DNA from: Chrysemys picta bellii
Lineage: Eukaryota
Direction of reading: 5' to 3'
NCBI RefSeq assembly: GCF_011386835.1
Contig: NC_088794.1
Location: 34,658,001-34,722,000 of the forward strand
Length of the DNA stretch: 64,000 bases
Shown: piece after piece, positions 863 to 60,559 of the stretch
Layout of the letters: each line of letters starts with the position of its first letter
Position numbering within the stretch: the stretch's first letter is position 1
Notes under the pieces: generated by a model
Told to the model about the DNA's origin: nothing
Seen by the model: only the letters and a program-made list of their open reading frames with translations
The model's database searches: none
Translations under genes and position numbers: made by a program

Positions 863-880
863 TTGGGGAGTGCCCCATGT

Positions 881-2335: not shown

Positions 2336-2417
2336 GAGGAAAGTACATAGAAGGTTGGAGAAGGGAAGGTCGGGTGGATCCCTGGTACAAACTGGTAAGT
2401 CATCCCTGGGTGTCCCA

Positions 2418-7869: not shown

Positions 7870-8065
7870 CCCCAGAAAGCTCAAGTTCCATTCCCAGAGC
7901 AGACACTGACTGTCAGTGTGGTCTCAGGAATGTCGCATCATCATTCTGCTTCAGTATCTTTATTGGTACAACGAATACAGTAATACTTATCTCACCTCAC
8001 AGGCTTGTTCTCAGAATCAACCAGTTAATGTACTAACCAGCTAGCTGGTCAAGTGCTTTGAAGGT
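7870..8065 (+). repeat. Ancient MIR/CORE-SINE-like remnant
   Basis: CTGCTTCAGT...TAATACTTATCTCACCTCACAGGCTTGTT...AAGTGCTTTG resembles the CORE-SINE consensus; highly diverged. Confidence 0.4.
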
Positions 8066-8944
8066 AAAGTGCTAGTTTAAGAGTAAAATTTGTGAACATG
8101 ATTAAATGACTTTGGACCCTAAGAACCACTTTCAAAGTAACTTAGGCACTTAGGAGTCTAAGTCTTATTGATTTCCAGTGAGACATAAGCAGTTATAAAA
8201 AGTTTAGCCTGATTATATTACGCTGGTATACTAAAAATTTACCCTAATAAAAAGTTATAATTATGAGTTAAATAAAAATTTGTTTCTCTCTAAGCCTAGA
8301 TCAGATCTTAACATACACTGTAAGCAGGTATTATATAAGGAATATCTAGGGTTAGAAACTAAACAAAATTAAGATCCGTTAAATATCTGTGGCATAAATC
8401 CCGTCATAAATAAAAAAAAGCTGGCAGAACTGTGCTATTTTCATCAAATCAGGTTAGTTTTTTGCCTTCAGATTCTTAAAAAAACAAAAATCAATATTTT
8501 TCTTCTCCCTCAAGACATGCAAAGTGGGGTTAAATTTATTAAGGTGCTATTACATCAGGCTCTTGACTTTGTCTCATTGGATTTGAACCCTCACAGGAGA
8601 GAATTTTGGAGGTCTCAATGCAGTGTATATTAGACAGTTTGTGATCACAATTACGCATTAAAAACGGGGTAGAAAAATATTCCAGACTGACCTATTTTAA
8701 AGTTCTGAATTCTTCTGAACTTCTTTTCATTTTTAAAAGCCATTGTACTACTTGTTTCCAAACCTGAGTCAAAGGGCAGTAACATCCTCTAGTGGCTATG
8801 CAGTCATCATCCTTGATAACTCTTCTAGTTACTTTCTGCATTTCAATCTCTGATCTTATGCCATTTTAAAATCTTAGCCAGTTTGCCCTTTGCTATTGTT
8901 ACCAGCTGGGTCTAATGTGATTGAAAATTAGTGCAGGAGTACCA

Positions 8945-11165: not shown

Positions 11166-13901
11166 TGAAATACTGATAGTATTTCTTGCCCCAGGGATAC
11201 TGCTGATGTTTCACTGTATCTGACCCCAACCAACTAGAGTTTTCATTTCTGCTATGCTAAATAAAAGCAAGATAGAAACATTCAATTAGTTCCACTTTGA
11301 TTAGTTCGGAAAAATATGCTTGCAAAGGAATACTGGCTTTCAACACTTCCTTATACCTGGGTGTACTTATTGGAAACACTTGACTCAGATAAGAATTTTA
11401 ATTCCCTACACTGCATGTAACAAATCAATTAATCATGTAATCATCACTAACAAAATATTCACTTGAGGAGTATGAGAAATGATACAATTACTAATATCTC
11501 AGCTGTTACATTAATGTGTTACTTTAGTCAGGTGGTAAATATCACCATTGATCTCCTAAGGCTCATGCATTTAAAAAGTATTACAGGTTAGGTTCCTGAA
11601 TGGAAGCATGTAGTGATGGAATTATAGTGGAGACCAAAAGAACCTGATCTTGCTACTAAATCTGGCGCTAGACTGCCAAACTTTCCTGATAATCCTGATT
11701 ACAACAGAGCTACCAGGCTATATATGTATGGTATGTAATAGTTAGTAGGACTCATTTGTTTGTTTACATTTGCAGTTTAAAAGAAGGAAATGTCAGTCAG
11801 ATGTAGATAGGAGAAACGTCTGTACCCTACATAGAAAGATCATCATACTTCGTAGCTCAAGCATGGATTCACAAAGCAGAATAATGTTTCAACAAAGGAT
11901 TACGAAGTAGACTATTTTTTTTTCAATCTCACCCCATAGCTTTTACCATCACAGTTAAGAAACCAAATATATATTTCAATTACCAACCTCCTCCCTCCCA
12001 CGGAAGCCTCTTAGCACTCTACACATTATTTAACTCAAAACTATTATCTTATTGATCAAACTGAAAAACCTGAGTTATAAACAAACTCCGTTGTCTCCTC
12101 CCAACTCTTATTCAGAAAAGACATCAACAGACCCTACATATCAAATGCATTCTGTAAAAAAGGGTTTTTTAAAATATCAACTAGCTTGTATGTATTTTTA
12201 ATAAGCATGCTATTTTATCATTCCCAATATAGCAAGTTGTTTACCTTTATATTAAAGAAATCACAGATTCAATCCCTGACTTGCCCTGCCTTGAGATGAT
12301 CCTAATTAAGAAAGGTAGCTATGCTAAAATGAAAACCTGTGATTGATCAGTGGGCGTCTCCCACATATTATGAGGCTGTAAAACTGTATATAATATTCCG
12401 TCTTCCAGGATTGAGTGAAATGGAAAATCAAGAGCACTTTTGCTGCTTTTTCAGTTTGTTTTTGTCACAGTGTTTGAAACTACATTTCTCGCTTCACAGT
12501 GGACCAGATTTTGACCTCAGTTAAACGGAGCTGTTCTGGATTTATACTAGAATAACTAATATCAGACTCTGGGCCTTTGGTTTTGAAAAAACAGAATGAC
12601 GACAAGTCTAGGCAAATGAATGTTAATGTCTCATAAATAATGCAATTCTCATAGGATTGGCACCTTGAAACGCAATTTAGAACAATCTGGAAGGGTTGTA
12701 ATTCCTCCTCTTTTGGCATGATTTGAATTACAGAGAGGATACAAAGTAATAAAAGGATATTAATAGCAAAATATATTTTCAGCCAATGAGAGTGGGAATG
12801 TGTGCCTTTTTAAAACTTCCCTCACTGTGGCAGAAAATGTTGCTACTTCAGAACATGGATTTTACATATCTTTACATTTAATTTTAATTAACAAATATGC
12901 ATTTGGTGGTGATTGGTTTTAAAGAAAAATTCCACAATTTTCCACAAAAAAACAGCTGTACACATTCTCTTTAACTGCTATGATACACACAAACATGTTT
13001 GTGTATTTTTTTTGTTTAAAATTTACTTCAGATGTAATTAAAGTCAAAAATATGGGCACAGGCAGGTGAACATTTGTTAACATTAAGATTCAGTTTTAAA
13101 GTAACTGACTATTTCATTCATTTGAAAGAGCTTCCAAAACAATATTTCCATTTACAGCAAAATGACAACCATCTGAAGCCCCAATTAAGGATAAATGACT
13201 GCAACATTTCTCTCTCTTTTCTGAAATCAACAGTACTTTTAAATGCCCACTTCAACACAAAATGCTATTTTTCTCCTTTCAGCTATGTATAATTATTTCA
13301 TTATCTTTACTGAAAGCAGCACTAACTGCCTTATTAACTCTAATCTGCAACTCTTGATCAAACATATGTAAAGTTACTTGTACGCAAAGAATTTTCAGTT
13401 CTCATTTAAAGTTGTTGCTTTACTTAGAAGGATAGGAGGGGACTTTTCTATTTTTAGGATATTTGGGATCTTTCTCCATCTTAAAACTTTGTTAGCCTCT
13501 GGGAAATTTGGCAGAGTATTTCCCTCTTTCCACTGTTTAATGCCAAAAGATTTTCTTGCTCCTAAAAATAGATTAATCAGGAGAGAATCTGGCTGAAAAT
13601 GTTCATATACATATTTACCCTAATTATACTGGGAATAATAAAACTATAGTACATATATGCACCTAAAGTTGTTTTGTAAGTAAATGCTTGGAGCGGCAAC
13701 ATCCCATTTACAATAGTGACTGTGGCTTTATGCCTTATACCATTCACCAAGGTGTGAAAAAAATCACCTAGAAAATTGTTTAAGACAAGGCAAAAGAAAA
13801 AAAACCTTTTTTCAAAATATTATTCTAAACTAAGAGTAATAAACATGTAATAGACATGCTTTACAGAAATCCAGTCTAAAAAGCTGAATGAAAAATACAA
13901 A

Positions 13902-13997
13902 AAAAACAGGAGTACTTATGGCACCTTAGAGACTAACAAATTTATTAGAGCATAAGCTTTCGTGGACTACAGCCCACTTCTTCGGATGCATACATTC
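13902..13997 (-). mobile_element. Penelope-like element pseudo-LTR fragment
   Basis: Near-identical to 56783-56866; flanked by 13-bp duplication TGAAAAATACAAA (13889-13901, 13998-14010). Confidence 0.85.
13950..13989 (-). ncRNA. Minimal type I hammerhead-ribozyme-like motif in PLE pLTR
   Basis: Minus strand reads GCAT-CCGAAGA-A-GTGGGCTGTAGTCCAC-GAAA-GCTT-ATGC: stem I GCAT/ATGC, stem II GTGG/CCAC, palindromic AGCT stem III. Core deviates from CUGANGA (U4C, extra A). Confidence 0.55.
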
Positions 13998-16900
13998 TGA
14001 AAAATACAAAGGCTCTCTACACAACCAGGCACTAAGATTTAAAGGACCAGAGGACTGAAATATGACACATTTTATTATGGAGTAACCAAACAATGTCCTC
14101 TTGACTTTGTATAAATACACCAGTTAGTTGCATGTCTTATTGCTTCATTATAAACCACTGTGTATGGAGACAAAACCTATACATTTGAACGTAACAAAGG
14201 TTTTCCAACTTTCAAAATAAAAACTATGTATTAAGTTTTTTGTTGTGCACTTCAGCAGTATTGGAAAGATTGCACTGTTCTACCCACATTGTACTTGTTC
14301 TGTGAATAATTTCAGTCTTCTGAGCTATTAATGTAGCACCTTTCTTGAACAGTACATTCAATAATGGAGCAAGAAGAAAATGAATTGTCCAGAGATATGA
14401 AAGATTAAATTAGAGCAGATCACTTGGGCCTTACAAACTCTAGTTCTCTCTTTCCCTTTCTTCTCACGCTCATTTCCTCCCCCCCCCACGCCTTCCTCAA
14501 ACTACCAGTTCCCATCATTAGTCCTCCACCTCTCTCTGTTGTGTTGAATATTTGCTTCTGGAAACAGCATGAGTGCCATAATAGGATTAGAAAAGCGTCT
14601 TTAAGCAGTATTAACATGCCTGTTGTAGTGAGGACACCTGGAAGGTCGTGTCAGAATCGTAGTAGCCATGGCATATACCATCCCAAACCTTACTTTCACC
14701 TGTGCAAGTTCTGATACATGATAAATTGCCCAACATTTTCTTACATTTGGTGATAGCTGAGTGCAAAAAAAAAATCATGGAGACAAGTGTGCAACGACAT
14801 CTTAAATTATCTCAAAGCATAAGACTATCTGGCCTTAGAAATTTCCAAAACGCTACTTTTTCTTTCCTAATTACGTCAACATCCCCTCAACTGGACACTA
14901 TGTTTTCATGACTCTCCTTCTGGGCCTGGGGACGGTTGAAACTCCCTCTGGAGCTCATCCAGGGAGCTCTGAGCACTAGCTTGCAAGTGCCTACTGAGAG
15001 CAACAAGACTTTCAGCCCACCAAGGGATTGAGCATAATGGCCCTGCAGTGCTCTATCCCCTACCGGCCCAGGAAGCAAGGGTCTGAGCTTGGAATTACAA
15101 TTAATCCCATGTGTGGCAACACAACATGCTTTTCACTTCTAAAATATGTTTACGCATATGAAATTAGAGTGGGTCATTTGAATTTAAGCATTGGTAGGAA
15201 TTTGGATGCTAAAAGTTGCAGGTACAGTTTTGAAAGCATCTTTCAATATTAGCCTGTATGGTCATCTGCTACATATTAGATTTCTATTCTCTTTTTCACC
15301 AGAGAACAAAGATTTTTCTCCAAGGATCAAAGAAGTTATTTTCAGATACTACTGTCTAACTGCAAAAAAAAAAAAAAAAAAAAATAAAAGGGGGGGGGGA
15401 AGGAGGGATTCCAATGAACTATGCCTGGCAAGGTACTAAACAAGTTCACCATCATATAAAATCAACTTGTGTATTAGAACAGAAGAGGGGCTAGGGGCAT
15501 GTAAAGCTTTACTTTTCATTACAAACTGCCGTTTCAAAGCCATATGGCAGGGGTACCACCTGGGAATTCTCTCTGCCCACGATGACTAATTGCCACAGCT
15601 CCTGCTACAATTATATCTACAGAGACAAGGTAAGAATGACCTTAAGTGGGGAAAGCACAGAAGAGGATGATATTGTAGCTAGATGTTGAAGAGAAACAGA
15701 TGGGGCTGTTAGCTGTAAAAATATCAGCTTCCCAACTTTAAAGGGAAGAATCTGAACAATTTAAGGAAAACACTGCTTGGTATGGCTTAAAAATTCATAT
15801 TACAATAATTAAAAGACTGACTGCCCTATCCTCCAGGGTTAGTAGCTTGTCTCCAAGGCTGTAGGTGATGTTGTTTTTTGTTTATTTTTAAATTGTAATT
15901 GTGTATATGCATAAGGAGATGGGTTATAATTTGTTCCCCTTTCATTCTCCCTAGTAGCTACTGGCTCAGCAATGTAATCCCTGGTATCACTTAAACACGG
16001 GCATTCTACCATAGTGGCATAATATTGCTACTGCTACTGGAAGCTGTAAGATTTTGATGCATTCCTGCAGCATAGCACAGCTCTAAGTAAGGGACTATCA
16101 CTGTTAGATGACAGATTCTGTACTTATCACCAAAGAGTCCTTCACATGAGTCAAATCCAAAGGTCACAAAGAGAAACAAAAAATCACGTCTTCAAAACAT
16201 TCCAGAAACTAATATTACTGGCATCACAAGGAGACTCTGGTACCTGCAGTGGGAAACTGAATTGGTTCCTCAAAGTGTGATTTCACGTCAGTAACTGCCA
16301 ACACTGGCTGCTGCGCCGGTCAGTCAGCTCTTTTCAAAGCCATTAGATTGAGAGGTAATGAGGTGAATTTTCAGGATTGCTCATTTTGACTGAGTGCTTC
16401 TGAAATTTTGATATAGAAGAAGAAACCAAGAGAATAAAGTGATGGTGGTAACATATGATCAGCAGCTAGAGACTGGAGAAACATACTAGAAGAAGCACAA
16501 CACATTTTATTAAGGTGTTTATCTAGGTAGTTGCCAATCTGAGAAAAGGGAGATGATTTCTGTCCCTGGATTACTTGGGTAAGTAACAGAAAGTGAAACA
16601 CGTTGCTACTTGGTTTGGGTTACAGGGAAAGAAGAAGGTTTTTTGATTGAAATCAGACAATCTACTTATTGGTCTTATTCATTTTCTTGACATGAAACAG
16701 ATTTCAATTACAATAGGGGCCCTAACCCTTTTTGTTTGGTCTGCTGACAGAAAAGCTGCATTGTAACAATAGTAGGAACATCGCTAATTATCTGCCTCAT
16801 TTGCGATCAAATACAATTAAGTAGCACTAATTATTTGCTGTGTAACAGCTAAAGTGTGGAAGAGGGTAACCAATCTTTATAATAACCTAATTAATAGACC

Positions 16901-25906: not shown

Positions 25907-26914
25907 ATGGAAGGTGTGCCATCAGCTGTTGTAACCTGCACAGGTTGTGCCATGTTTGTCTTTCTTCCACAGGACAGAAGCAACTTTGTCTGTACAAAGT
26001 GCAAGCTGGTCTCCATATTGGAAGAGAAGGTTCGAGGGCTGGAGAAACGAGTATCGACTCTGAGTTGCATAAGGGAAAATGAAGATTTCCTGGACAGACG
26101 TCAGGAGATGCTTCTACGGCCGCAATGTTCTGAAGATTCAGAGCAGGCGCAGCAGGGACAGAAGGATTGTGAGGAGGTTTGGCAGCATGTGACCTCCAGA
26201 AGGAGAAAGAGGAGCGTCCATGCACCAGCAATGGAAATACAGGTGAGCAATCGTTTCCAGGTTCTCTCTACAGGTACTAATGCGGAGAGTGGACTAGATG
26301 ACCCATCTGAGGGAAGGGAGCAGAAGGCGACTCCACCGATTGGAAGGCAAAAGATGCACTGTCCTAGGGATGGGGGTTCCACGACCACCACTCCCAAGAG
26401 GAGGAGGAGGGTGGTGGTGGTCGGGGACTCCCTCCTCAGGGGGACTGAGTCATCTATCTGCCGCCCCGACTGGGAAAACCGAGAGGTCTGCTGCTTGCCA
26501 GGAGCTAGGATACATGATGTGACTGAGAGACTGCCGAGACTCATCAAGCCCTCGGATCGCTACCCCTTCCTGCTTCTCCACGTGGGCACCAATGATACTG
26601 CCAAGAATGACCTTGAGCAGATCACTGCAGACTACGTGGCTCTGGGAAGAAGGATAAAGGAGTTTGAGGCGCAAGTGGTGTTCTCGTCCATCCTCCCTGT
26701 GCAAGGAAAAGGCCGGGGTAGAGACCGTCGAATCGTGGAAGTCAACGAATGGCTACGCAGGTGGTGTCGGAGAGAAGGCTTTGGATTCTTCGACCATGGG
26801 ATGGTGTTCCAAGAAGAAGGAGTGCTAGGCAGAGACGGGCTCCACCTAACTAAGAGAGGGAAGGGCATCTTCGCCAGCAGGCTGGCTAACCTAGTGAGGA
26901 GGGCTTTAAACTAG
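25907..26914 (+). CDS. CR1 ORF1p: zinc-finger (CTGC...CTKC), coiled coil, SGNH/GDSL esterase domain
   Basis: Open 335-aa frame with [20 protein letters not shown] and RDGLHL blocks. Confidence 0.92.
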
Positions 26915-26958
26915 GTTCACCGGGGGAAGGAGACCAAAGCCCTGAGGTAAGTGGGGAA

Positions 26959-29813
26959 ATGGGATCCTGGGAGGAAGCACAAGCAGGAGAGTGCAAGAGG
27001 GGAGGACTCCTGTCTCATGCTGAGAAAGAGGGGCGATCGATGAGTTATCTTAAGTGCCTATACACAAATGCAAGAAGCCTGGGAAACAAGCAGGGAGAAC
27101 TGGAAGTCCTGGCACAGTCAGGGAACTATGATGTGATTGGAGTAACAGAGACTTGGTGGGATAACTCACATGACTGGAGTACTGTCATGGATGGATATAA
27201 ACTGTTCAGGAAGGACAGGCAGGGCAGAAAAGGTGGGGGAGTTGCGTTGTATGTAAGAGAGGAGTATGACTGCTCAGAGCTCCAGTATGAAACTGCAGAA
27301 AAACCTGAGAGTGTCTGGATAAAGTTGAGAAGTGTGAGCAACAAGGGTGATGTCGTGGTTGGAGTCTGCTATAGACCACCAGACCAGGGGGATGAGGTGG
27401 ACGAGGCTTTCTTCTGGCAACTAGCAGAAGTTGCTAGATCGCAGGCCCTGGTTCTCATGGGAGACTTTAATCACCCTGATATCTGCTGGGAGAGCAATAC
27501 AGCAGTGCACAGGCAATCCAGGAAATTTTTGGATAGTGTAGGGGACAATTTCCTGGTGCAAGTGCTGGAGGAACCAACTAGGGGCAAAGCTTTTCTTGAC
27601 CTGCTACTCACAAACAGAGAAGAACTAGTAGGGGAAGCAAAAGTGGATGGGAACCTGGGAGGCAGTGACCATGAGATGGTCGAGTTCAGGATCCTGACAC
27701 AAGGAAGAAAGGAGAGCAGCAGAATACGGACCCTGGACTTCAGAAAAGCAGACTTTGACTCCCTCAGGGAACAGATGGGCAGGATCCCCTGGGAGAATAA
27801 CATGAAGGGCAAAGGGGTCCAGGAGAGCTGGCTGTATTTTAAAGAATCCTTATTGAGGTTGCAGGAACAAACCATCCCGATGTGTAGAAAGAATAGTAAA
27901 TATGGCAGGCGACCAGCCCGGCTAAACAGTGAAATCCTTGCTGATCTTAAACGCAAAAAAGAAGCTTACAAGAAGTGGAAGATTGGACAAATGACCAGGG
28001 AGGAGTATAAAAATATTGCTCAGGCGTGCAGGAGTGAAATCAGGAAGGCCAAATCACACTTGGAGTTGCAGTTAGCTGTTAGTTAGATGTTAAGAGTAAC
28101 AAGAAGGGTTTCTTCAGGTATGTTAGCAACAAGAAGAAAATCAAGGAAAGTGTGGGCCCCTTACTGAATGAGGGAGGCAACCTAGTGACCGAGGATGTGG
28201 AAAAAGCTAATGTACTCAATTATTTTTTTGCCTCTGTCTTCACGAACAAGGTCAGCTCCCAGACTGCTGCACTGGGCAGTACAGCATGGGGAGAAGGTGA
28301 CCAACCCTCTGTGGAGAAAGAAGTGGTTCGGGACTATTTAGAAAAACTGGACGTGCACAAGTCCATGGGGCCGGATGCGCTGCATCCGAGGGTGCTAAAG
28401 GAGTTGGCGGGTGAGATTGCAGAGCCATTAGCCATTATTTTTGAAAACTCATGGCGATCGGGGGAGGTCCCAGATGACTGGAAAAAGGCTAATGTAGTGC
28501 CCGTCTTTAAAAAAGGGAAGAAGGAGGATCCGGGGAACTACAGGCCAGTCAGCCTCACCTCAGTCCCTGGAAAAATCATGGAGCAGGTCCTCAAGGAATC
28601 AATTATGAAACATTTAGAGGAGAGGAAAGTGATCAGGAACAGTCAGCATGGATTCATGAAGGGGAAGTCGTGCCTGACTAACCTAATTGCCTTCTATGAT
28701 GAGATAACTGGCTCTGTGGATGAGGGGAAAGCAGTGGATGTGTTATTCCTTGACTTTAGCAAAGCTTTTGATACGGTCTCCCACAGTATTCTTGCCGCCA
28801 AGTTAAAGAAGTATGGGCTGGATGAATGGACTGTAAGGTGGATAGAAAGCTGGCTAGATCGTCGGGCTCAACGGGTAGTGATCAATGGCTCCATGTCTAG
28901 TTGGCAGCCGGTTTCAAGCGGAGTGCCCCAAGGGTCGGTCCTGGGGCCGGTTTTGTTTAATATCTTTATTAATGATCTGGAGGATGGTGTGGACTGCACT
29001 CTCAGCAAGTTTGCAGATGACACTAAACTAGGAGGCGTGGTAGATACACTAGAGGGTAGGGATCGGATACAGAGGGACCTAGACAAATTAGAAGATTGGG
29101 CCGAAAAAAACCTGATGAGGTTCAACAAGGACAAGTGCAGAGTCCTGCACTTAGGACGGAAGAATCCCATGCACTGCTACAGACTAGGGACCGAATGGCT
29201 AGGTAGCAGTTCTGCAGAAAAGGACCTAGGGGTCACAGTGGACGAGAAGCTGGATATGAGTCAACAGTGTGCTCTTGTTGCCAAGAAGGCTAACGGCATT
29301 TTGGGCTGTATAAGTAGGGGCATTGCCAGCAGATCGAGGAACGTGATCGTTCCCCTTTATTCGACATTGGTGAGGCCTCATCTGGAATACTGTGTCCAGT
29401 TTTGGGCCCCACACTACAAGAAGGATGTGGAAAAATTGGAAAGAGTCCAGCGGAGGGCAACAAAAATGATTAGGGGTCTGGAGCACATGACTTATGAGGA
29501 GAGGCTGAGGGAACTGGGATTGTTTAGTCTCCAGAAGAGAAGAATGAGGGGGGATTTGATAGCAGCCTTCAACTACCTGAAGGGGGGTTCCAAAGAGGAT
29601 GGAGCTCGGCTGTTCTCAGTGGTGGCAGACGACAGAACAAGGAGCAATGGTCTCAAGTTGCAGTGGGGGAGGTCCAGGTTGGATATCAGGAAAAACTATT
29701 TCACTAGGAGGGTGGTGAAACACTGGAATGCGTTACCTAGGGAGGTGGTGGAGTCTCCTTCCTTGGAGGTTTTTAAGGCCCGGCTTGACAAAGCCCTGGC
29801 TGGGATGATTTAG
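26959..29813 (+). pseudogene. CR1 ORF2 (APE endonuclease plus reverse transcriptase), one frameshift at about 28070-28086
   Basis: [25 protein letters not shown] (APE); [35 protein letters not shown] (RT). The 375-aa and 553-aa ORFs differ by +2 frame. Confidence 0.95.
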
Positions 29814-32589
29814 CTGGGAATTGGTCCTGCTTTGAGCAGGGGGTTGGACTAGATGACCTCTTGAGGTCCCTTCCAACTCTGATATTCTATGATTCTATGA
29901 AATCACTGCATGTCAAGTTAAAACTTCAAGAAGAAAGCTAAGGAAATTCACATACAGAAAACTAAGTTAAAAGAGAACTAAGGTTGCAAAGAAATCAGTT
30001 GCTCTGAAAAACATGCTTTTACAACACCGTAGTTATAAAAGTGTTTTTGATTGCTAGAAAATTTTAAGTTAAAAGATTTAGGAAAAAAACATTCAAGTCT
30101 GGGAGTCAGAGTTTTATTTCTTCACAAAATCTTAACCCTTCCTCCTCTCCTTTCTTTTTTAAACATATGCCCACCATACCTCTCCAACATATTTGATGTC
30201 CACATACTTCAACAACATCCGATGCTGAACATACTGATGCTGAAACTATGCTTTCATTATATAAAGAGACACTTACCTATGGTCTTAGATTACACGGTAT
30301 TAGATGTTATATGAGCGGCTACTCCCCAGATCCGCCTCTAACTCATCCCCCTTTATTAGCGGACTACACTAACAGCTTATCTTTTACACAGTGTGTCTGC
30401 ACCGTCTTTGATTTATGCTTAATGAAGAGGCCACAGGGTTTTGTTTTTTTAAACCACATACTGAACAATCCCCTAACTACTAATCCAGTATAAATCACAA
30501 TGTCAAGCCTAACCTCTCTATAATTGTTACAAGAACTACTTGAATCATCATCAAACTCCTGACGTGAACCTATACTGAATGAGCACATAAAGGAGCTCCA
30601 CCCTAAAGCCAATGATGGCCCACTGATCAGAATGTATCATTCTCCAAAACATACTGGATGGGTCAGACTTATCTGTATCACAGAGAAGTTAGAGAGAAAA
30701 ATCAGATTGTGAAAAGTAACCATAGTTGTGTGTGTAACAGACGGCATACACTGTGGTGGGGGCACAGTTTCTAGACTTTCAAGTCTTTGTTTTTTTGAAA
30801 GTTTTTTTACATACATTTATAACTGTAATGGACATTTCCCAGTAGAGTACAATAATTTTAGACTTCGTGTAGTTCAGAATCTTCGTACAGAACTCATGTG
30901 CAAGAAAAAGTGTTTACATACAAAGCCGAATAAGGAGACTTGCATTTCATTACTTATCTACAGACTCCATCCAGAAAAAAAAAATTCTGTAGCAGTAACA
31001 AGTCCTGACTTGGATCAAACGAAATCTAGGTAGGTTCTGTGTAACCTGAGACATAATAATGTGTGTTTGAACTTTTTGACTCACCCTCCCTGTAATATTC
31101 CAATAGGTTCTGAACACAATAAATGAATGACAAAGATAGCTTTTCTTCTTCAGAAGGCAAATATCAAAGAGAAAAGACTTTGTTTGTAGTGAAGGGAACA
31201 AGGGAGTGTGAATGAAAGTGGTCTTGCACCCATGAAAAGGAAATTCAGTTTCTATTGCAGCAGCCAAGGACGCAGGCAAGGGCTGTAACACACTTGGGAC
31301 CATATTCTGATATGATTGCATCTCCCAATGACTTCAGTGAGAGTTTTATCCCCTTGTTCAAGGGTATAATTTGGACTAAATGATTAAATATCAACTTCAC
31401 TATGCAAATAGACCCCGGTTCAGTAAGGGACTTGAGTACATGTTGAATGCTTAATTATTTTGTTGAATTGATGCCTTAAATGAGTATCCACAACATGAAC
31501 CCTATATAACCATCCAATCACATCCAAAAGGCAGGGGTGTATTTTGGGTCCTCCACAAAAGAATGAAGAGCACTGCACTGCACAACCACTGCAAACATCA
31601 CAGAGGCCCACTTCTGCACCTTTCCTTTTCCCACTGCTTATTTTAATCAAATTAAAGGAAGTTCTGAGTCCCACAATCCTAGTTATAATTTTATAGCACT
31701 TTGTAAAGATGTTAGCAAAGCTCTGGTGAGCAGAGGAAAATCTGCCATAAGCCAAAACAGTTGTAAGGCTTCTAGTTCTAAAAATATTTCCATGACCTAT
31801 TAAGGTCAAATAACCTTGTGCTTGAAACTCCTGATTTCTTATGTTGAATTTCACAAATTACTACTCTTACTGCATAAAAAAAAAAGTTTGGAAGAACTTT
31901 AGAAGAGCATTAGGAGATAAGCATGTACTAGGAAATACTGCACTGCTACTGTGATAGACCTAATACCTACCCAAAATAATTCTAACTCATCTTGAAGAAA
32001 TGTATACCCTAAAAAATAACAGTGCATAGATAGCATCATTATATTTTTAGTAATCCAGGAAGGATTAGTAGCCTGCAATCAAGCAGAGAAGGAGATCAGA
32101 GAGGGCGATTAGAGAAGAGGAAGGAGGAGGAGGAGAGGGATATCAGGGAAGGATAAAACAGAGATTTAAAATTATAACACTGTTACGGACATAAGCATAA
32201 ATTAAGGAAAGATGAACTGGTTAAGGATTGACAAAAAAGATTAGGAATGTTAAGAAATGGAACATAATTAAAATGCTAATGACTAATGTTATCACTAAAG
32301 TAAAAAGATTGCTAAGGAACAATTTAGGTCTCCAAATACATTTAAAAGGTATAAAAACAACACAACTTCTCTCTCTTTTGGGTAGGGTTCAAGTGACACT
32401 TTCTACTTCCTTGTCACACTGGCTGAGATTTGTGAGGACAGGAGGAGTGAAATATCTTTGTCATTATTCTTATTGTAAGAGTGGATGAACAGGTTGTGTG
32501 CTTGGGCTGGTAGAAGGTTATGATGATTTTACAAGGAATGCATGTTGAGGGCACATATCGCTAGTCAGGTAGGAGACATCATCAAGACT

Positions 32590-52651: not shown

Positions 52652-53288
52652 GTCAGGGACAGCAAGAAAGCCAAGAAGGAGCCCGTAAGCACCGTGCAAC
52701 CTTGGCAGAAATCTAGAGAGCTTCTGGGTCTGGTGCTGGCTAAAGAGACTTGGGACTGTAAGCAAAGAAGCTATCCCATTTTTGGTTCCTCCTGTATTTG
52801 GAGAAGCAGAACTTTGTACATTTTTTGTAAACAAGCAAGACTGCATCAAAGAAAATACCAGACTCCATCATTGATGTCTACTCCCCACGGGTACATCCCC
52901 AGCGTCCTGAACTTTGTCTAGCCACTCAGGTTGTAAAGAGGCGGCAGCATCTTGACTCTCCCAGCACTGACCTAGCACATCTCTAGCTACAAGACCAGTG
53001 ACGTCGAATTACGGTACCACTGACTTGCTATGAAACTTCACCATTTGTTTTTTGAGTTTACACTATTTTATAGCTACGTAGCAACTTCACATGATTAAAG
53101 AAAGTATTTGCATCAGAAAATATTTAGCAAGCAAAAATTGAGCCATTAGGAAGACAAACTACTATTGTACTTCCCAACTGATATTAGCTAAAAATTTTCC
53201 TTTTTTTACATTGTTAGATTTATTTGAATGCAATTTCAGGGGATGAAATTGGCGTCAGTGACTGCAGGAACAACTTTCATTTTCTCCA

Positions 53289-53438
53289 TGTAACCCCCAA
53301 GGAGATTACCTAGATTCCTGGGGCTCTGTCTGCTGGCAGCTCAGGGAGGGGGAGCCAAGGCAAACTCAGAGTCTGCCCGGCAACCAATAGGGAGTGAGAT
53401 GCCCCCCCAGGGAGTTCAGGAAAGGGGAGAAGCCATTT
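53289..53438 (+). repeat. Left terminal inverted repeat (150 bp)
   Basis: Reverse complement of 58142-58291, with about 4 substitutions and 2 single-base indels by manual alignment. Confidence 0.95.
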
Positions 53439-53599
53439 GGGGGTCAGTTTGGAGTGAGCCAGGGCAAGGGCAGGACTGGCTGTGTGGGAAGTTAGTAAGT
53501 CCCAGGCCTGCATGCAGGGTTCCCCCGAAAACTGGCCTCTAGGTACCTGAAAACAAGATCCTTCACCTGGGTTTTTCCTTCTCCACTGGTGATTCCCAT

Positions 53600-53764
53600 T
53601 CTTTGTGGTCGTTTGGGCCAGAAGACCCCAGGCATGGTTCGCCCTCCATGGCGAGAGCCGACCCCGGGCTCATCCACGACGCATTATGACCATGATAGCT
53701 CTGTCGATGAGTCACTAGGGAAAGTTGTAAGAGTATCCAAAGCTGTTTTGTCCATACCCCCACA
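53600..53764 (+). repeat. 165-bp direct repeat, copy 1 (protease-RT linker)
   Basis: Matches 57963-58127 with 8 substitutions by manual count. Confidence 0.95.
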
Positions 53765-55620
53765 TGGTAAGATTGACTTAAGAGAAAAACTTGAGAAGCA
53801 CAGTAGCAGCCTTCCTCATACAGTGATGATGGAGTCCTCTGATGGAGATAACCTCCCTAGTGGTCTGATGGTTCGAAGAGGTTTATTGTCCTTACTACAG
53901 ATGAAGGAAGCTGGCATTATGGTAAGAGTAAGAAATGAAACCAACCATCCCATAGCTATCAGGAAAGGAATGGCATTGGCACGACTGTATAGAGTAGAGA
54001 GTGTTGTAAGCCCTGCAACTGCAGCCGGAAAGCCCTGTAGGGCATTGGATCCTGGTCTTTTTAATGTTGGTAATTCTCCTGTTTCTCCCAGTTGGAAAGA
54101 CCGGTTGAAAAAGCAGCTAAGTGAGAGACCTAATGTGTTTTCCACTGAGGAATGGGATGTGGGGTGTGCCATTAACATGGAACACACCATTCGTTTGGCA
54201 GATAACAGGCCTTTTAGGGAGAGGTCCCAAAGACTGGCACCTGCAGACATTGAGGATGTGAGAAAGCATATCCAAGAACTATTGGAAGCAGGAATAATTT
54301 CTGAATCCCGTAGCCCCTATGCATCCCCCATTGTGGTGGTGCGGAAGGAAAAATGGGACTGTGCGCATGTGTGTGGACTATCGTACACTGAATAAAAGGA
54401 CCATCCCAGATCAATACACTGTACCCAGGGTAGATGATGCCTTAGCTTACCTAGCAGGAAGCAGATGGTTCTCTGTCTTAGATTTATGAAGCGGCTACTA
54501 CCAGATCCCGATGAGCTCTGAAGACAAAGAGAAAACAGCTTTCATTTGCCCTTTGGGATTCTACCAGTTTGAGAGGATGCCCCAAGGTATCTCGGGAGCT
54601 CCTGCTACATTCCAGCATTTGATGGAGAAGACGGTGGGGGATATGAATTTGTTAGAAGTGCTGGTGTATTTCGATGACTTAATTGTTTTGGGGAAAACTC
54701 TGGAAGAGCATGAAGCTTGACTAATGAAAGTGTTAGACCGCCTGGAAGCTAGTGGATTGAAACTGTCACTTGATAAATGTCAATTTTGTCAGACCCGAGT
54801 AAAATATATAAGCCATTTTGTGTCAGCAGAAGGTGTGGCGACTGACTCCAAGAAGATTGAGGCATAAACCACCTGGCCTATACCCAAAGATCTGAAAGCT
54901 TTACCATCTTTCCTAGGCTTCTGTGGATATTACCGCCAACTTGTAAAAAAATATTCCTCCATTGTGAGACCGCTCACCAATTTGACAAGAGGATACCCCC
55001 CAACGTGGAAGAGATCACCCCAACGTAAACTTGTGAGTCCTCCTGAGAGGTATTTCAAGGTGAATGAGCCATTTGGGGATCGTTGGACTGAGGAATGCAA
55101 CAACGCTTTCCATGCCCTTATTGAGAAACTCACCACTGCACCAGTGTTAACCTTTGCAGACCCTACCAAGCCCTATCAACTGCATGTAGATGCCAGTCTT
55201 GATGGATTAAAAGCAGTTCTCTATCAAAATTATGAGAATCAATGGAAACCCATGGCCTTTGTCAGTCGAGGGCTGACTGCATCTGAAAGACACTATCCTG
55301 TGCACAAACTTGAGTTTTTAGCTCTCAAATTGGCTGCTGTGTACAAACTTCATGATTATCTATACGGAGCGAACTTTGTAGTAAAAACAGATAACCTACT
55401 TACTTATGTGCAGACCACAGCTAAACTAGATGCTACTGGTCAGCGATGGATGGCTGCCTTGGCTGCTTATGACTTTAAGCTGCAGTACCATTCGGGTCAA
55501 ACAAATGCAGATGCAGATGCATTGTCCCGTCGCCCTCATAACCCACTCGAGGAAGAGTCTGAGTGGATGGAAATATCTCCTCCTGCTATTCGTGCCACCT
55601 GCAAGACCATAATAGGAAAA
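53600..55620 (+). pseudogene. Gypsy pol fragment: linker, RT, RNase H (stops and frameshifts; no integrase)
   Basis: SRSPYASPIVVVRK, CVDYRTLN, FSVLDL*SGYYQI, KTAFICPLGFYQFERMPQG, VYFDD, LHVDASLDG, KLEFLALK, TDN, NADADALSR. Confidence 0.95.
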
Positions 55621-56490
55621 CTGCAGCCCTTACAGAAAGCTGAATTTCTTTTCAGGCATTAAACCAGTGCCTGTAGGGGAAGATGACTATGACACTTGGA
55701 GGCATCAACTAAATCAGCTGATGCAGGAATGGCAATGTAGTGAGGCTAAAAAGAAGAAACGTGTGGCAGAAAGCCTGCGAGGACCTGCAGGGAATGTAAT
55801 CTGTGCATTAAAAGCCAGCAAGCCTGTTGCCACTGTTGATGACTATCTCTCAGTGATGGCGGGTACCTTTGGGACCCTACAGACAGGGGAAGACCTCTAC
55901 TTTCAATTTCGGTCCTGTTACCAACAGCCAGGTGAAAAACTATCTTCCTGTCTTCACAGATTGGAACCATCCCTTCAACTGTGCATCCGCCGTAAAGGCA
56001 CTGAGAGGAGCAAGGAACACCGAGTACGACTAGAACAGGTCATACAAGGTGCCATTTATGACGACTTTCTAATGATGAAATTGAAACTTGTAGACCAATT
56101 GGACAGTCCTCCAGAATTCCATCAATTGCTGCGAGAAGTCTGAGAGGAGGAGGAAAAGAGAACTGTTAGAGAAAAGAATAAGATCTCAGTCAGCAGGACC
56201 GTTGCGCCTAACAAACTGAAGGATGACCCTTGTCTGTCTACCACTGAGGACCTCCATCAACAGCTTAAAACCCTGACAGCACAGCTCACTGAATTTATGA
56301 CAAGTAAGATGCCTCAGAGGTTACCTAGTGAAATTCTGCCACCAACTTTGACAGAAAGAAAGTACCCTCCTTTTCGCCCAGGGAGAGGGGACCCCAACAG
56401 AGAACCTGTAAAGAAAACCTTGGTAACCCTTCCAAGGAAAAAGAGATTCTGCTACCAATGTGGTGAGGATGGCCACAACCGGAGGAACAA
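55620..56490 (+). pseudogene. Gypsy gag C-terminal part (PNMA-like capsid, truncated CCHC knuckle)
   Basis: YRKL-x-FSGIKPVPVGEDDYDTW...ESLRGPA...FGTLQTGEDLY...YQQPGEKLS; CYQCGEDGH at 56450-56476. Confidence 0.9.
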
Positions 56491-56824
56491 AGAGAAGGTA
56501 GCACAACGAAAAAGGGAGCATACTGGGAGCCATTACAGTCAGCGCTCCACTAAGTTGTGTTATGAACAGCCTTCCTGGAGCCCATTCCCAGAGGGACTAA
56601 TAGACCCAGCAGCAGTAGTTAATGTGATGGTAGAAGGGATTCTTTGTAGGGCCCTGCTGGACAGTGGATCTCAGGTCACCATCATTACTAGAGAATTCCA
56701 TCAGCAATTCTTGCCTCAAGTGGAAAAAAAATATGGAGATATACCTATCTCATAGAACTGGAAGGGACCCTGAAAGGTGATTAGGAGTACTTGTGGCACC
56801 TTAGAGACTAACAAATTTATTAGA

Positions 56825-56864
56825 GCATAAGCTTTCGTAGACTACAGCCCACTTCTTCGGATGC
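56825..56864 (-). ncRNA. Minimal hammerhead-like motif in the sense 3' pLTR
   Basis: GCATCCGAAGAAGTGGGCTGTAGTCTACGAAAGCTTATGC; one G.U wobble in stem II relative to the other copies. Confidence 0.5.
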
Positions 56865-57452
56865 ATATAGAATGGAACATATATTGAGGAGATATATATA
56901 CACACATACAGAGAGCATAAACAGGTGGGAATTGTCTTACCAACTCAGAGGCCAATTAATTAAGAGAGAAAAAACTTTTGAAGTGATAATCAAGCTAGCC
57001 CAGTACAGACAGTTTGATAAGAAGTGTGAGAATACTTACAAGGGGAGATAGATTCAATGTTTGTAATGGCTCAGCCATTCCCAGTCCTTATTCAAACCGG
57101 AGTTGATTGTGTCTAGTTTGCATATCAATTCTAGCTCAGCAGTCTCTCGTTGGAGTCTGTTTTTGAAGTTTTTCTGTTGTAATATAGCCACCCGCAGGTC
57201 TGTCACTGAATGACCAGACAGGTTAAAGTGTTCTCCCACTGTTTTTTGAGTATTTTGATTCCTGATGTCAGATTTGTAAGTATTCTCACACTTCTTATCA
57301 AACTGTCTGTACTGGGCTAGCTTGATTATCACTTCAAAAGTTTTTTCTCTCTTAATTAATTGGCCTCTCAGAGTTGGTAAGACAACTCCCACCTGTTTAT
57401 GCTCTCTGTATGTGTGTATATATATCTCCTCAATATATGTTCCATTCTATAT

Positions 57453-57492
57453 GCATCCGAAGAAGTGGGCTGTAGTCCACGAAAGCTTATGC
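57453..57492 (+). ncRNA. Minimal hammerhead-like motif in the inverted pLTR
   Basis: GCATCCGAAGAAGTGGGCTGTAGTCCACGAAAGCTTATGC, identical to the reverse complement of 13950-13989. Confidence 0.55.
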
Positions 57493-57962
57493 TCTAATAA
57501 ATTTGTTAGTCTCTAAGGTGCCACAAGTACTCCTGTTCTTCTTTTTGCGGATACAGACTAACACAGCTGCTACTCTGAAAGGTGATTGAGTCCAGCCCCC
57601 TGCCTTCACTAGCAGGACCAAATACTGATTTTGCACCAGATCCCTAAGTGGCCCCCTAAGGGATTGAACTCACAACCCTGGGTTTAGCAGGCCAATGCTC
57701 AAACCACTGAGCTATCCCTCCCCTATTGCTTGTCCCATATCAAGTGAAGATCTATCCTCTAGAGGGATTGGCAATATGGAGCCTTAGCAATGTTAGTTAC
57801 CCGTATGAGGGATATGTACTAGTGACTAAGTTCTCCTGCAGAACTGGCTGGATGTCTCCAGGATTGTGATACTCTGGCTTTGATTTATCCTGAGACGCAA
57901 AATTCTGATGGCATTCCCATATTGATTGGAACCAACAGCAACATGTTCCAGTCTTTGGCCAC

Positions 57963-58127
57963 TCTTTGTGGGCGTTTGGGCCAGAAGACCCCAGGCATGG
58001 TTTGCCCTCCAGGGCGAGAGCCAACCCTGGGCTCTTCCATGACGCATTATGACCATGATAGCTCTGTCGATGAGTCACTAGGGAAAGTTGTAAGAGTACC
58101 CAAAGCTGTTTTGTCCATACCCCCACA
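57963..58127 (+). repeat. 165-bp direct repeat, copy 2
   Basis: Duplicate of 53600-53764; ends 14 bp before the right TIR. Confidence 0.95.
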
Positions 58128-58141
58128 AGATATGGACTCCA

Positions 58142-58291
58142 AAATGGCTTCTCCCCTTTCCTGACCCCCTGGGAGGGGCATCTCACGCCCTATTGGTTGC
58201 CGGGCAGACTCTGAGTTTGCCTTGGCTCCCCCTCCCTGAGCTGACAGCAGACAGAGCCCCAGGAATCTAGGTAATCTCTTTGGGGGTTACA
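58142..58291 (-). repeat. Right terminal inverted repeat (150 bp)
   Basis: Reverse complement of 53289-53438. Confidence 0.95.
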
Positions 58292-60559
58292 TCCACTAAC
58301 CGTTTATTGCAAATAGAATAGCTGCAATAGAAAAGAGCTTAAAAATATATATCAAGAATGTATTTTAGTTACTAAAAACCCTTATTGACCCCCTGTTGTA
58401 AGAAAAGTGAACTACTGTATCATATCTTACAGGTCTATATGAATTTATTGATTCTTCCAAAGTTCTGAGAAGCATCTTTTAAGAGCAGCCAAAAAAGTCA
58501 ATACCACATTAGAAAGGTCATACAGAGTCAAGACTTTTTTACATTATAAGCTGGCACAGAATTATGCTTGCTGAATGTCATATGTATTTCAAGGCTTCAG
58601 ACCCAGAGCTACTTTACATACATTTTGATACGTAGTTCCCAAATCAACACCATTAATGACTAGAGCCAAGTCTCTTCTAGGACAATGCCAGAATCACAGA
58701 AAGAGGGAACTGTTTTCTGTGCATTAGCTTCACCCCATATGGAAGATGTCAGAGACTAAGGCTCTGCTCATGTATGTTTGCAAGGCAAGACAACCCCACT
58801 TGTCCTTGGTGGTTCAGCCACTTGGGCAGACACCAGTAATTGATGCATAGGCAGAGGTTAGTAGGAGAGATGGTCAAACATAGCAATCCTATTCAGAGCT
58901 GATGGTTGTGCAGAAGAGGCAAGGTGAACTGGACTAATGATTGCTATGAGGGGGAAGTAGAGGGAGTTGGAGGTTTGAGTGGGACAATGAGGGCTAGGAA
59001 AGACTATCAGGAAAAACAAGGAGTGGGAAATACAAAGTAGAAAAAATCCCAACCGGCTCAGAGGGTGGAGGAACATCTGGGCTGAGTCACTGCTGATTTT
59101 TGGCAAAGTGAATGGACAAAGAAAACCTACATACATCAGCTACTGCCTCCACTCAGCATGCTGTCGCTCAATACTCTGAATTCTTCCTGAAATGTACCGT
59201 GAGTCTGGCAGTCTGAGGAGATCTAGAGAAGGTTCTACAGCACATTTCCTGCAAATCTCCGAATGAAGAACACCAGCACACCAATCCATTTTCTCCAAAT
59301 CATGCCTATACATTTCCCCCTGCCCTTACCAACATGGAAGGGGAAAGAAAGGGGAGTTACACACCTCTACAATGGAAGCAACAAGATGCAGCAACAGGTA
59401 AACCTCTCAAAATCCCCTCTGGATTTTCCATTGTGTAGTAGCTTTTTGCAAAGCAAAGGGTGTCAACAGCAGTTAGCCGGCAGAACAAAAAGGAGGTCTT
59501 ACTTATTTCTTCAGGTATATCTATAAGCCATTTTAAGATTAATATTAAAGGATATACACATTAAATAGTTGACAGAACACAAGGCATACTGATTATTTAA
59601 AGAATAAAATGTGACTATTATATATAGCACAACCTTCCTACTTGGTTTTGCAGTAATCTGATACTGATATGAAATGCAAGTATTATACAGTACTCTGAAA
59701 TCTACTGACAAATTATCTTTAGTTGTTTAATGCACACAATGTGGTTATAACAATCTTTCTCTTGTTCCCTTCCTCTTCACTGGGTTTTGTACATCACGAG
59801 TGGAATAACTATGCTTAGACAGTGATATGCTGGAAGATTGTGGCATCTGCTTGCTAATTATATACAATTTGTTGATCAATGTTGAAAATTAATTAATGGA
59901 TGATATATGCATGGCATTTATCTTAAGCTATTATAAGTCTGTATTCATGTGAATAATGAATGAAGCAACACAGGATTTTGCCTGCAGTCCTACAGGATAA
60001 TCATATTAAATCAGCATTTTAACAGTTTATTCTAGTAAGTTAAAATGTTTTCAAAACAAATGTGAGTTGTTATTAAACCAGCTCAGTTACAATACCTATT
60101 CACTATTCACAAATGTTTGTTATTGTAGATGCATCTGCTAATAAATGCAACAATGCAAGACAATTAGATTCCAGTATTTCTAATCCTTCAAAACTTTACT
60201 TTTTAAGCCTATTCATGTGGGAGGGGAGGAAGGAAGAAGAGAACAGCCCAGGAAGCTGTGGAGATCATACCTCTGACCAAAACACTGACTGTTACCTAGA
60301 AGGTGCAGTAAAACGAAAGCATTTTCAATTCTAAACCTCAACCGCAACCTCTATCACCACCAATTTATTTTTCTGCTCTGATCACTTGCAAGAAACACCA
60401 TCACTGCAGACTATTAACTTCTTAAAAATACCTATGTAAATGTTTTTATTTTATAAGTGTTCCCTGTCATTCTACTTCTCTGAGGATAAGTACTGAGGGT
60501 TTTCTGGGAGTTCCAAGACCACTTTGATACAAAAGCTGCTTTTAACTGGGGGCTTCAAC

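What the first reader, a model, noticed from the sequence alone, without database searches (positions are those of the whole stretch)
53289..58291. Gypsy-derived element with INVERTED termini, 4-bp TSD and scrambled, integrase-less cargo: candidate undescribed element architecture
Seen: 150-bp TIRs at about 96% identity, beginning TGT and ending ACA; a perfect TCCA TSD; the interior is Gypsy RT-RNaseH-gag-protease with no integrase or transposase. Established: Gypsy elements have direct LTRs, whereas TGT..ACA TIRs with 4-bp TSDs characterise Ginger1 DNA transposons derived from Gypsy integrase. Inference, two options: (a) an aberrant cDNA carrying the same LTR end twice was inserted by a Gypsy integrase in trans, or (b) this is a non-autonomous Ginger-like TIR family packaging retroelement cargo. 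Either would be a snapshot of the LTR-to-TIR transition.
Basis: partly seen in the sequence, partly recalled or inferred. Interest (0 to 1): 0.85.

Follow-up and report, generated by a model that had tools for sequence, protein, structure and literature searches.

The report
Rearranged Gypsy copy with two same-end LTR termini
This is one old, dead and scrambled copy of an ordinary Ty3/Gypsy retrotransposon that was inserted with the same (5'/U3) LTR end at both tips, so it only looks like a DNA transposon with inverted repeats; it is a rare by-product of reverse transcription and integration, not a new kind of element.

Summary
Inverted arms of 157 bp (96% identical) run TGT...ACA at 53289-53445 and 58135-58291, flanked by a perfect TCCA duplication. 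The interior carries RT-RNaseH, then gag-protease, and no integrase.

The Ginger-like reading does not hold. A canonical relative fetched from another assembly (L001) has direct 1243-bp LTRs, a 4-bp TSD, a PBS, a PPT and gag-PR-RT-RH-IN. Its LTR starts with the same 19 bases as the "TIR". So the arms are the 5' (U3) end of the family LTR used twice: nt 1-~325 forward on the left, nt ~158-1 reversed on the right.

The interior is a circular permutation with a ~167-bp redundancy, joined at three novel junctions. Two of them sit on short homologies. A later 1-kb repeat is nested in the protease.

Both outer junctions occur in short-read contigs of four organisms. Words spanning the inner inverted junction occur in runs of eight organism labels, so the insertion is real and old.

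The LTR part has about 100 times the contig depth of the flanks; the interior has 1-4 times.

Best reading (about 0.62): a template-switched, aberrant cDNA with two U3 ends was integrated in trans by the family integrase. It arrived dead and is a curiosity. The scan flagged this same stretch twice, and flagged similar unverified cases elsewhere in this genome.

The parts
53285..53288 (.). Left copy of the 4-bp target-site duplication, TCCA
   Evidence: Read directly. Contigs of 4 organisms bridge the flank into the element here (table 8).
53289..53598 (+). 5' part of the family LTR (nt 1-~325 of a 1243-bp LTR), forward. Its first 157 nt (53289-53445) form the left 'TIR' arm.
   Evidence: blastn to both LTRs of L001 (5821-6145 and 13309-13633), 76% identity, first 19 nt identical. 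Contig depth is about 100 times the flanks.
53599..53600 (+). Junction J1: LTR nt ~325 joined to the post-protease region, inside a patch of imperfect homology (TTGTGG..GTTTG on both partners)
   Evidence: Positions 53562 and 53566 lie 37 and 33 letters from a contig end in all 4 runs, which fits high-copy LTR contigs ending at about 53599 (table 3).
53601..55632 (+). Segment S2: post-protease linker, RT, RNase H and tether (pol aa 160-838 of the relative); frame broken in several places
   Evidence: 94% identity to L001 9026-11061; tblastn; Pfam RVT_1, RT_RNaseH.
55627..55632 (+). Junction J2: end of the RNase H tether joined to mid-gag through a shared CCCTTA (6 nt perfect, about 10 nt imperfect)
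55626..56722 (+). Segment S3a: Gag from aa 173 (PNMA core), zinc knuckle, protease N-terminal part
   Evidence: 89% identity to L001 7657-8806; Pfam PNMA E=3e-41; tblastn.
56723..57739 (.). Nested later insertion of very-high-copy repeat(s), 1017 bp. It is flanked by a 7-bp TSD TCAAGTG (56716-56722 / 57740-57746), contains a large palindrome (56773-57041 / 57274-57544) and a Penelope-like ORF on the minus strand.
   Evidence: Depth is 10^5-10^6. The site is uninterrupted in L001. A contig of organism C spans its right edge (record 23).
57740..58127 (+). Segment S3b: protease C-terminal part and post-protease linker. 57961-58127 repeats 53601-53767 (the terminal redundancy of the permutation).
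   Evidence: 90.5% identity to L001 8800-9189. The direct repeat is 95.1% identical, K2P 0.051.
58128..58136 (+). Junction J3: 2-9 nt that cannot be assigned to either partner, between the post-protease linker and the reversed LTR
   Evidence: The two sampled 31-mers from 58102-58163 are held by 12 runs of 9 studies under 8 organism labels.
58137..58291 (-). Reversed copy of LTR nt ~158-1: the right 'TIR' arm, ending ...TTACA
58292..58295 (.). Right copy of the 4-bp target-site duplication, TCCA
   Evidence: Read directly. Contigs of 4 organisms start at 58262/58263 and run into the flank (table 8).

Best explanation
This is a single, defective integrant of a Ty3/Gypsy family with a PNMA-type Gag. 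The DNA that was inserted was not a normal LTR-gag-pol-LTR cDNA. It was a rearranged molecule: LTR nt 1-~325, then post-PR-RT-RH, then mid-gag-ZnK-PR-post-PR, then LTR nt ~158-1 reversed. Both tips of that molecule were therefore the natural 5' (U3) end of the LTR, the end defined by polypurine-tract priming. That end carries the TGTAAC sequence the family integrase recognises; the natural U5 tip is its near mirror, ...GCTACA. An integrase supplied in trans by an autonomous copy joined the two identical ends to a staggered cut and made the family's usual 4-bp duplication (TCCA).

The three internal junctions most likely arose before integration. The likeliest route is template switching by reverse transcriptase between co-packaged templates. 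J1 and J2 sit on short homologies. The run-off at U3 nt 1 explains the exact tip. A variant is end-joining of two cDNA pieces whose U3 ends were integrated together.

Shown: the structure, the LTR origin of the arms, the TSD, the canonical architecture of a relative, and old age shared between species. Inferred: integration in trans and the template-switch origin. The copy lacks PBS, PPT, LTR nt 326-1243, Gag aa 1-172 and integrase, so it could not replicate again.
For: The arms and TSD are confirmed.

The relative L001 5821-14551 has identical direct 1243-bp LTRs (TGTAAC...GCTACA), a 4-bp TSD CTGT, a PPT directly before the 3' LTR, and a candidate PBS (read by eye, no tRNA matched) one base after the 5' LTR. 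It also has gag (PNMA_N, PNMA, zf-CCHC) and pol (PR, RVT_1, RNase H, Integrase_H2C2, rve).

This element maps to the L001 element as nt 1-325 | 3206-5241 | 1837-3369 | rc 1-~158. J2 lies on a shared CCCTTA. J1 lies in an imperfect homology patch of about 20 nt.

Arm divergence (K2P 0.039) and the divergence of the internal redundancy (0.051) are alike, as expected if both duplications date from one event.

Both outer junctions occur in contigs of organisms A, B, C and E. J3 words occur in 8 organism labels. Interior depth is 1-4 times the flank; LTR depth is about 100 times.
Against: No empty site was seen, so the single-event reading rests on a 4-bp TSD (chance 1 in 256) plus exact TGT/ACA tips. 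J1 and J2 were not shown directly in independent reads, because the listed contigs do not bridge them. No cDNA with two U3 ends has been observed for this family. I found no paper describing such an integrant, so the route is inferred. Microhomology is also compatible with DNA-level MMEJ. J3 shows no clean homology. The ~100-fold depth of the LTR part was not resolved into solo LTRs versus other arrangements.
Confidence: 0.62

Rival explanations
1. Integrase-independent capture: two or more fragments of Gypsy cDNA, each keeping its natural U3 end, were ligated into a staggered chromosomal break by end-joining. The 4-bp repeat came from fill-in of the overhang.
For: J3 carries 2-9 unassignable nt, typical of end-joining. 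The interior is a patchwork of fragments. Capture of retroelement cDNA at breaks is established in yeast (own knowledge, not checked here).
Against: Both tips are exact at LTR nt 1 with TGT/ACA. The duplication has the same length as the TSD of the canonical relative (4 bp). Captured cDNA is usually truncated at its ends and lacks a TSD.
Confidence: 0.13
2. Post-insertion rearrangement: one or two ordinary insertions of the family (for example two nearby copies in opposite orientation) were later fused and scrambled by deletions and duplications. The TCCA match is chance.
For: Junction microhomologies also fit replication-based or MMEJ rearrangement of genomic DNA. The element is old.
Against: It needs two same-family insertions within a few kb, loss of all host DNA between them, and a 1-in-256 TSD coincidence. 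Homologous inversion between LTRs cannot replace the outermost U5 tip by a U3 tip. Arm and internal-repeat divergences are equal, which points to one event.
Confidence: 0.1
3. Non-autonomous Ginger-like DNA transposon: a family bounded by LTR-derived TIRs, mobilised as DNA by an integrase-like transposase, here carrying retroelement cargo.
For: TGTAA tips fit TGTNR, the arm length lies within 40-270 bp, and the TSD is 4 bp. The LTR 5' part has about 100 times the contig depth, and the make-up of those copies was not resolved. Other unverified notes report inverted-LTR Gypsy remnants in this genome.
Against: The arms are the 5' end of a direct LTR in the canonical relative. The left homology runs to nt ~325 and the right only to ~158, which is not a symmetric TIR unit. 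TCCA is not the CCGG/CCGT target of Ginger1. No transposase is present. The interior is low copy. There is no second inverted pair in the window or in L001.
Confidence: 0.05
4. Assembly artefact: the inverted right arm or the permutation is a mis-join of repeat copies.
For: The structure consists of repeats, and J1 and J2 were not bridged by listed independent contigs.
Against: Both flank junctions occur in short-read contigs of four organisms. J3-spanning words occur in 12 runs of 9 studies. The nested insert's right edge is in another organism's contig (record 23).
Confidence: 0.03

Closest known systems
Canonical Ty3/Gypsy LTR retrotransposon with PNMA-type Gag (the same family; example L001 5821-14551, GCA_049634645.1)
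   Same: 89-94% nucleotide identity over gag core, PR, RT and RNase H. The same LTR start (first 19 nt identical). TGT...ACA tips and a 4-bp TSD.
   Different: The canonical copy has direct 1243-bp LTRs, a candidate PBS, a PPT, full Gag and integrase, in the order gag-PR-RT-RH-IN. This copy has two U3 tips in inverted orientation, a permuted interior, and none of PBS, PPT or IN.
Ginger1 DNA transposons (Bao, Kapitonov & Jurka 2010, PMC2836005)
   Same: TIRs of 40-270 bp, TGTNR tips, 4-bp TSD.
   Different: Ginger1 encodes a Gypsy-integrase-like transposase and targets CCGG/CCGT. Here there is no transposase, the TSD is TCCA, and the arms are demonstrably LTR sequence of a retrotransposon.
Autointegration ('suicide') and other aberrant cDNA forms of LTR elements: inversion and deletion circles (Lee et al. 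2020, PMC7197481, citing Garfinkel et al. 2006)
   Same: By-products of reverse transcription and integration that give inverted or circularly permuted retroelement DNA.
   Different: In autointegration products the new junctions lie at LTR tips and the product is a circle. Here the junctions lie inside the LTR and pol, and the product was a linear molecule that entered the chromosome with a TSD.
DIRS1-like retroelements
   Same: Retroelements with a Gypsy-like RT/RNase H and inverted terminal repeats (papers listed).
   Different: DIRS elements use a tyrosine recombinase, have an internal complementary region and make no TSD (own knowledge). Here there are a protease, a PNMA Gag, a 4-bp TSD and LTR-derived arms.

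Membership tests
Ty3/Gypsy LTR retrotransposon (this PNMA-Gag family) | Homologous gag, protease, RT and RNase H | tested here: met
   Pfam; 85-93% amino-acid and 89-94% nucleotide identity to L001 gag/pol.
Ty3/Gypsy LTR retrotransposon (this PNMA-Gag family) | Two direct LTRs | tested here: not met
   Only LTR nt 1-~325 forward and nt ~158-1 reversed are present. The feature is met in the relative L001. This copy is therefore a rearranged derivative, not a structurally canonical member.
Ty3/Gypsy LTR retrotransposon (this PNMA-Gag family) | PBS, PPT and integrase | tested here: not met
   None of the three regions has a match in the window. In L001 integrase and a PPT are present, with a candidate PBS read by eye.
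Ty3/Gypsy LTR retrotransposon (this PNMA-Gag family) | TG...CA tips and a TSD of the family's length | tested here: met
   TGT/ACA tips and a 4-bp TCCA; L001 has a 4-bp CTGT.
Ginger1 DNA transposon | Encodes, or is mobilised by, a Gypsy-integrase-like transposase of a TIR element | tested here: not met
   No integrase-like ORF in the element or window. The only integrase found for these termini sits in a canonical LTR element.
Ginger1 DNA transposon | TIRs of 40-270 bp starting TGTNR | tested here: met
   157-bp arms starting TGTAA. The same pattern is normal for Gypsy LTRs.
Ginger1 DNA transposon | 4-bp TSD at CCGG / CCGT targets | tested here: not met
   The length fits but the sequence is TCCA.
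Ginger1 DNA transposon | Several copies bounded by the same TIR pair | not testable with these tools
   No genome-wide search was available. Interior depth is 1-4 times the flank. The high LTR depth could not be split by arrangement.
DIRS1-like retroelement | Tyrosine recombinase, internal complementary region, no TSD | tested here: not met
   No recombinase among the ORFs or Pfam hits; a protease and a TSD are present.

The most novel reading that the evidence does not exclude
The U3/U3 unit is not a one-off. Same-end integrants (U3/U3 or U5/U5) would be a recurrent class in this genome, and some LTR-derived inverted pairs, hidden in the ~100-fold contig depth over the LTR 5' part, would be re-mobilised as DNA by the family integrase. 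That would be a living intermediate between LTR retrotransposons and Ginger-type TIR transposons.
Probability: 0.05. Interest if true: 0.85.

Novelty: new variant of a known kind. Interest (0 to 1): 0.38.

Why it matters
This is a natural, evolutionarily fixed case in which a Gypsy integrase appears to have joined two identical (U3) LTR ends to a chromosome with a normal TSD. It suggests that end identity, not the U3/U5 pairing, is what the enzyme needs in vivo.

It also warns annotators. Structure-based TIR finders will call such copies DNA transposons, and LTR finders will miss them.

It does not document an LTR-to-TIR transition. The copy is dead, apparently unique and explainable by known enzymology. 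A survey confirming the other inverted-LTR Gypsy remnants noted in this genome would make the frequency and rules of same-end integration a small but real question.

Tried and rejected
- I used an 82-aa stop-free ORF across the LTR part as a protein probe to fetch paralogous LTR copies. No candidates came back.
- I searched the 232-aa RNase H ORF, whose C-terminus spans J2, in the 90%-cluster database to find orthologous loci. The best hit was only 59-63% identical, all from other Gypsy families.
- P0001 (88% identical) at first seemed to share J2. It does not. It is a gene model that fuses the pol of a canonical copy to Mx/dynamin-like exons. Its 'SPY' is the normal RH-IN linker, which happens to contain the CCCTTA microhomology.
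- I first read the LTR end as lying at 53598 (...CCCA followed by a TGGTGA 'PBS'). That is rejected: in L001 the direct repeat runs on to 1243 bp, so J1 lies inside the LTR.
- Autointegration circles are rejected as the origin, because their junctions must lie at LTR tips.
- Back-splicing or a circular RNA as the source of the permutation (there is a splice-acceptor-like tract near 55650) is rejected: that tract is ordinary gag sequence, also present in L001.
- Rfam found nothing in 53000-58600.
- Read laying was swamped by the nested high-copy repeat, so joints and loose ends for the LTR part were not listed.
- Literature searches for naturally integrated inverted-LTR Gypsy copies found none.
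Full report
**Observation**

The repeat finder reports inverted arms at 53288-53445 and 58135-58292 (158 nt, 94% ungapped). A gapped alignment gives 150 matches in 156 aligned positions, 96.2%, K2P 0.039. The left arm begins TGTAACC at 53289 and the right arm ends GGTTACA at 58291. TCCA stands directly outside both (53285-53288 and 58292-58295). The first 36 nt of the arm occur nowhere else in the window, with 0 expected by chance.

On the + strand the ORF pieces carry these domains:
- RVT_1 in 54319-54720.
- RT_RNaseH in 54964-55662.
- A PNMA-type Gag core in 55667-56143, E=3e-41.
- A CCHC knuckle and the DSGS protease motif in 56297-56755, and the protease C-terminus in 57880-58127.

No integrase is present.

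**What the arms are**

A representative-library search with the RNase H piece gave one close relative, P0001 (88%). Its encoding locus, L001 (assembly GCA_049634645.1), holds a canonical copy of the same family at 5821-14551. That copy has:
- two direct LTRs of 1243 bp with no mismatch between them;
- tips TGTAAC...GCTACA, a 4-bp TSD CTGT, a purine tract directly before the 3' LTR, and a candidate PBS (read by eye; no tRNA was matched) one base after the 5' LTR;
- a 484-aa gag ORF (PNMA_N, PNMA, zf-CCHC) and a 1518-aa pol ORF (protease, RVT_1, RNase H, Integrase_H2C2, rve).

blastn of our element against it maps as follows:
- Window 53289-53598 matches nt 1-325 of either LTR (76% overall; the first 19 nt are identical).
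- Window 53601-55632 matches element nt 3206-5241 (94%).
- Window 55626-56722 plus 57740-58127 matches element nt 1837-3369 (89-90%).
- Window 58291-58165 matches LTR nt 1-151 in reverse. The arm alignment to the left LTR copy extends this to about nt 158.

So the "TIR" is the 5' (U3) end of the family's ordinary direct LTR, present twice: once as the start of a truncated forward LTR and once reversed. The following are missing: LTR nt 326-1243, the PBS and leader, Gag aa 1-172, pol aa 839-1518 (integrase) and the PPT.

**Interior and junctions**

The interior is a circular permutation of gag-core to RNase H, with a ~167-bp terminal redundancy (53601-53767 = 57961-58127; 95.1%, K2P 0.051). Another first-stage note on this same stretch said the same (s1-335747).

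There are three novel junctions:
- J1 (53598/53601) joins LTR nt ~325 to the post-protease linker. It lies inside a ~20-nt patch where the two partners resemble each other (TTGTGG..GTTTG).
- J2 (55626-55632) joins the RNase H tether to mid-gag through a shared CCCTTA.
- J3 (58128-58136) joins the post-protease linker to the reversed LTR, with 2-9 nt that cannot be assigned to either partner.

None of the junctions lies at a natural landmark of reverse transcription. That rules out autointegration circles, whose junctions lie at LTR tips (PMC7197481).

A 1017-bp block of very-high-copy repeat (56723-57739) interrupts the protease. It has its own 7-bp TSD, TCAAGTG, and the site is uninterrupted in L001. 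It is a later nested insertion.

**Reality and age**

Logan contigs of four runs from four organism labels (A, B, C, E) were laid on 52900-58700. In each run one contig runs from unique left flank into the arm (to 53317-53322), and one runs from 58262/58263 into the right flank. Each carries 0-8 differences. The overlap with the arm is 29-34 nt, at or just under the tool's 31-nt rule for bridging.

A 62-nt query centred on J3 had two sampled 31-mers. Both are held by 12 runs of 9 studies under 8 organism labels. This is a weak search, but every possible word in that query touches the junction.

The insertion is therefore not an end mis-join, and it predates the split of these organisms. That agrees with 4-5% divergence between the duplicated parts. 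J1 and J2 were not bridged by any listed contig.

**Copy number**

Summed contig depth is about 100-160 times the flank over 53288-53481. It falls to 1-4 times over the Gypsy interior. The tool warns that this figure is not a true copy number.

Nearly all contigs differ from this copy at 53405, 53449, 53455, 53492, 53562 and 53566. So the abundant family covers the whole 310-bp LTR part. Positions 53562 and 53566 lie 37 and 33 letters from a contig end in all four runs, which fits those contigs ending at about 53599, that is, at J1.

This fits an old LTR family with many solo LTRs plus this one odd copy. It does not fit a family of cargo-carrying TIR elements. I could not, however, split the LTR depth by arrangement.

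**Mechanism**

The following steps are inferred, not shown:
- Both tips are exactly LTR nt 1, the end created by polypurine-tract priming.
- The family's natural tips are near mirrors (TGTAAC / TGTAGC reversed), so a U3/U3 molecule offers the integrase two acceptable ends.
- The duplication has the family's length, 4 bp.
- Arm divergence and the divergence of the internal redundancy are alike, which points to one event.

The simplest account is a strand that starts at the PPT, changes template three times (twice at short homologies, as reverse transcriptase does between co-packaged templates) and runs off the 5' end of a PPT-defined U3 template. The second strand is then completed, and an integrase from an autonomous copy integrates the molecule.

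A close variant is concerted integration of the U3 ends of two cDNA molecules, followed by end-joining of their inner ends at J3.

Homologous inversion between LTRs cannot produce this structure, because it never replaces the outermost U5 tip. Two opposed insertions plus a deletion would need a 1-in-256 TSD coincidence. Integrase-independent capture at a staggered break remains possible but fits the exact tips less well.

**Comparison with known kinds**

By sequence this is a member of a known Ty3/Gypsy family with PNMA-type Gag. By structure it fails the direct-LTR, PBS, PPT and IN criteria.

It resembles Ginger1 only in features that Ginger1 shares with Gypsy LTRs (TGTNR tips, 4-bp TSD). It fails the Ginger1-specific ones: a transposase and CCGG/CCGT targets (PMC2836005). 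DIRS-type inverted repeats come with a tyrosine recombinase and no TSD, so they do not apply.

My literature searches found no description of a naturally fixed U3/U3 Gypsy integrant. That is weak evidence of absence.

Other first-stage notes on this genome mention a Gypsy with inverted LTRs, a Gypsy remnant with U5 ends outward "inserted as one unit", and an 8.7-kb PNMA-Gag Gypsy. All are unverified leads.

**Verdict**

The aberrant-cDNA reading is supported, and the Ginger-like or new-architecture reading is not. This is a rare variant product of a known element, of modest interest. A genome-wide survey showing that same-end integrants are recurrent or mobile would raise that interest.

Noticed in passing
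window 56723-57739: Nested 1017-bp insertion with a 7-bp TSD TCAAGTG. It holds a large palindrome (arms 56773-57041 / 57274-57544) carrying a minus-strand ORF (57054-57392) that I recognise as resembling the C-terminal GIY-YIG region of Penelope-like elements; Pfam and Rfam gave no hit. A very-high-copy segment follows at 57556-57739. Contig depth is 10^5-10^6.
   Followed up: partly
window 53343-53372 versus L001 5885-5914: A 30-bp stretch of the LTR is 100% identical but in opposite orientation in the two LTR subfamilies, flanked in L001 by short partial duplications. This is a small strand-switch-type inversion inside the LTR.
   Followed up: no
L001 10001-29537 (GCA_049634645.1, CM112011.1): Gene model P0001 (472 aa) fuses RT/RNase H of the canonical Gypsy copy to Dynamin_M/GED (Mx-like) exons, through a GT site just after the RNase H tether. 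It is either an annotation chimera or a real read-through transcript.
   Followed up: no
L001 5821-14551: This copy of the family has LTRs with no mismatch over 1243 bp and uninterrupted gag and pol reading frames, which indicates very recent insertion in that genome.
   Followed up: partly
L001 15809-16500: A cluster of nested inverted and direct repeats (arms of 97-168 nt, 96-98%) lies downstream of the Gypsy copy. It resembles the fold-back repeat nested in our element.
   Followed up: no
window 1-4000 and 26001-30000: GC-rich stretches (0.48-0.57) with strong positive GC skew, up to 0.25, stand out from the roughly 0.40 GC background. I did not examine them.
   Followed up: no
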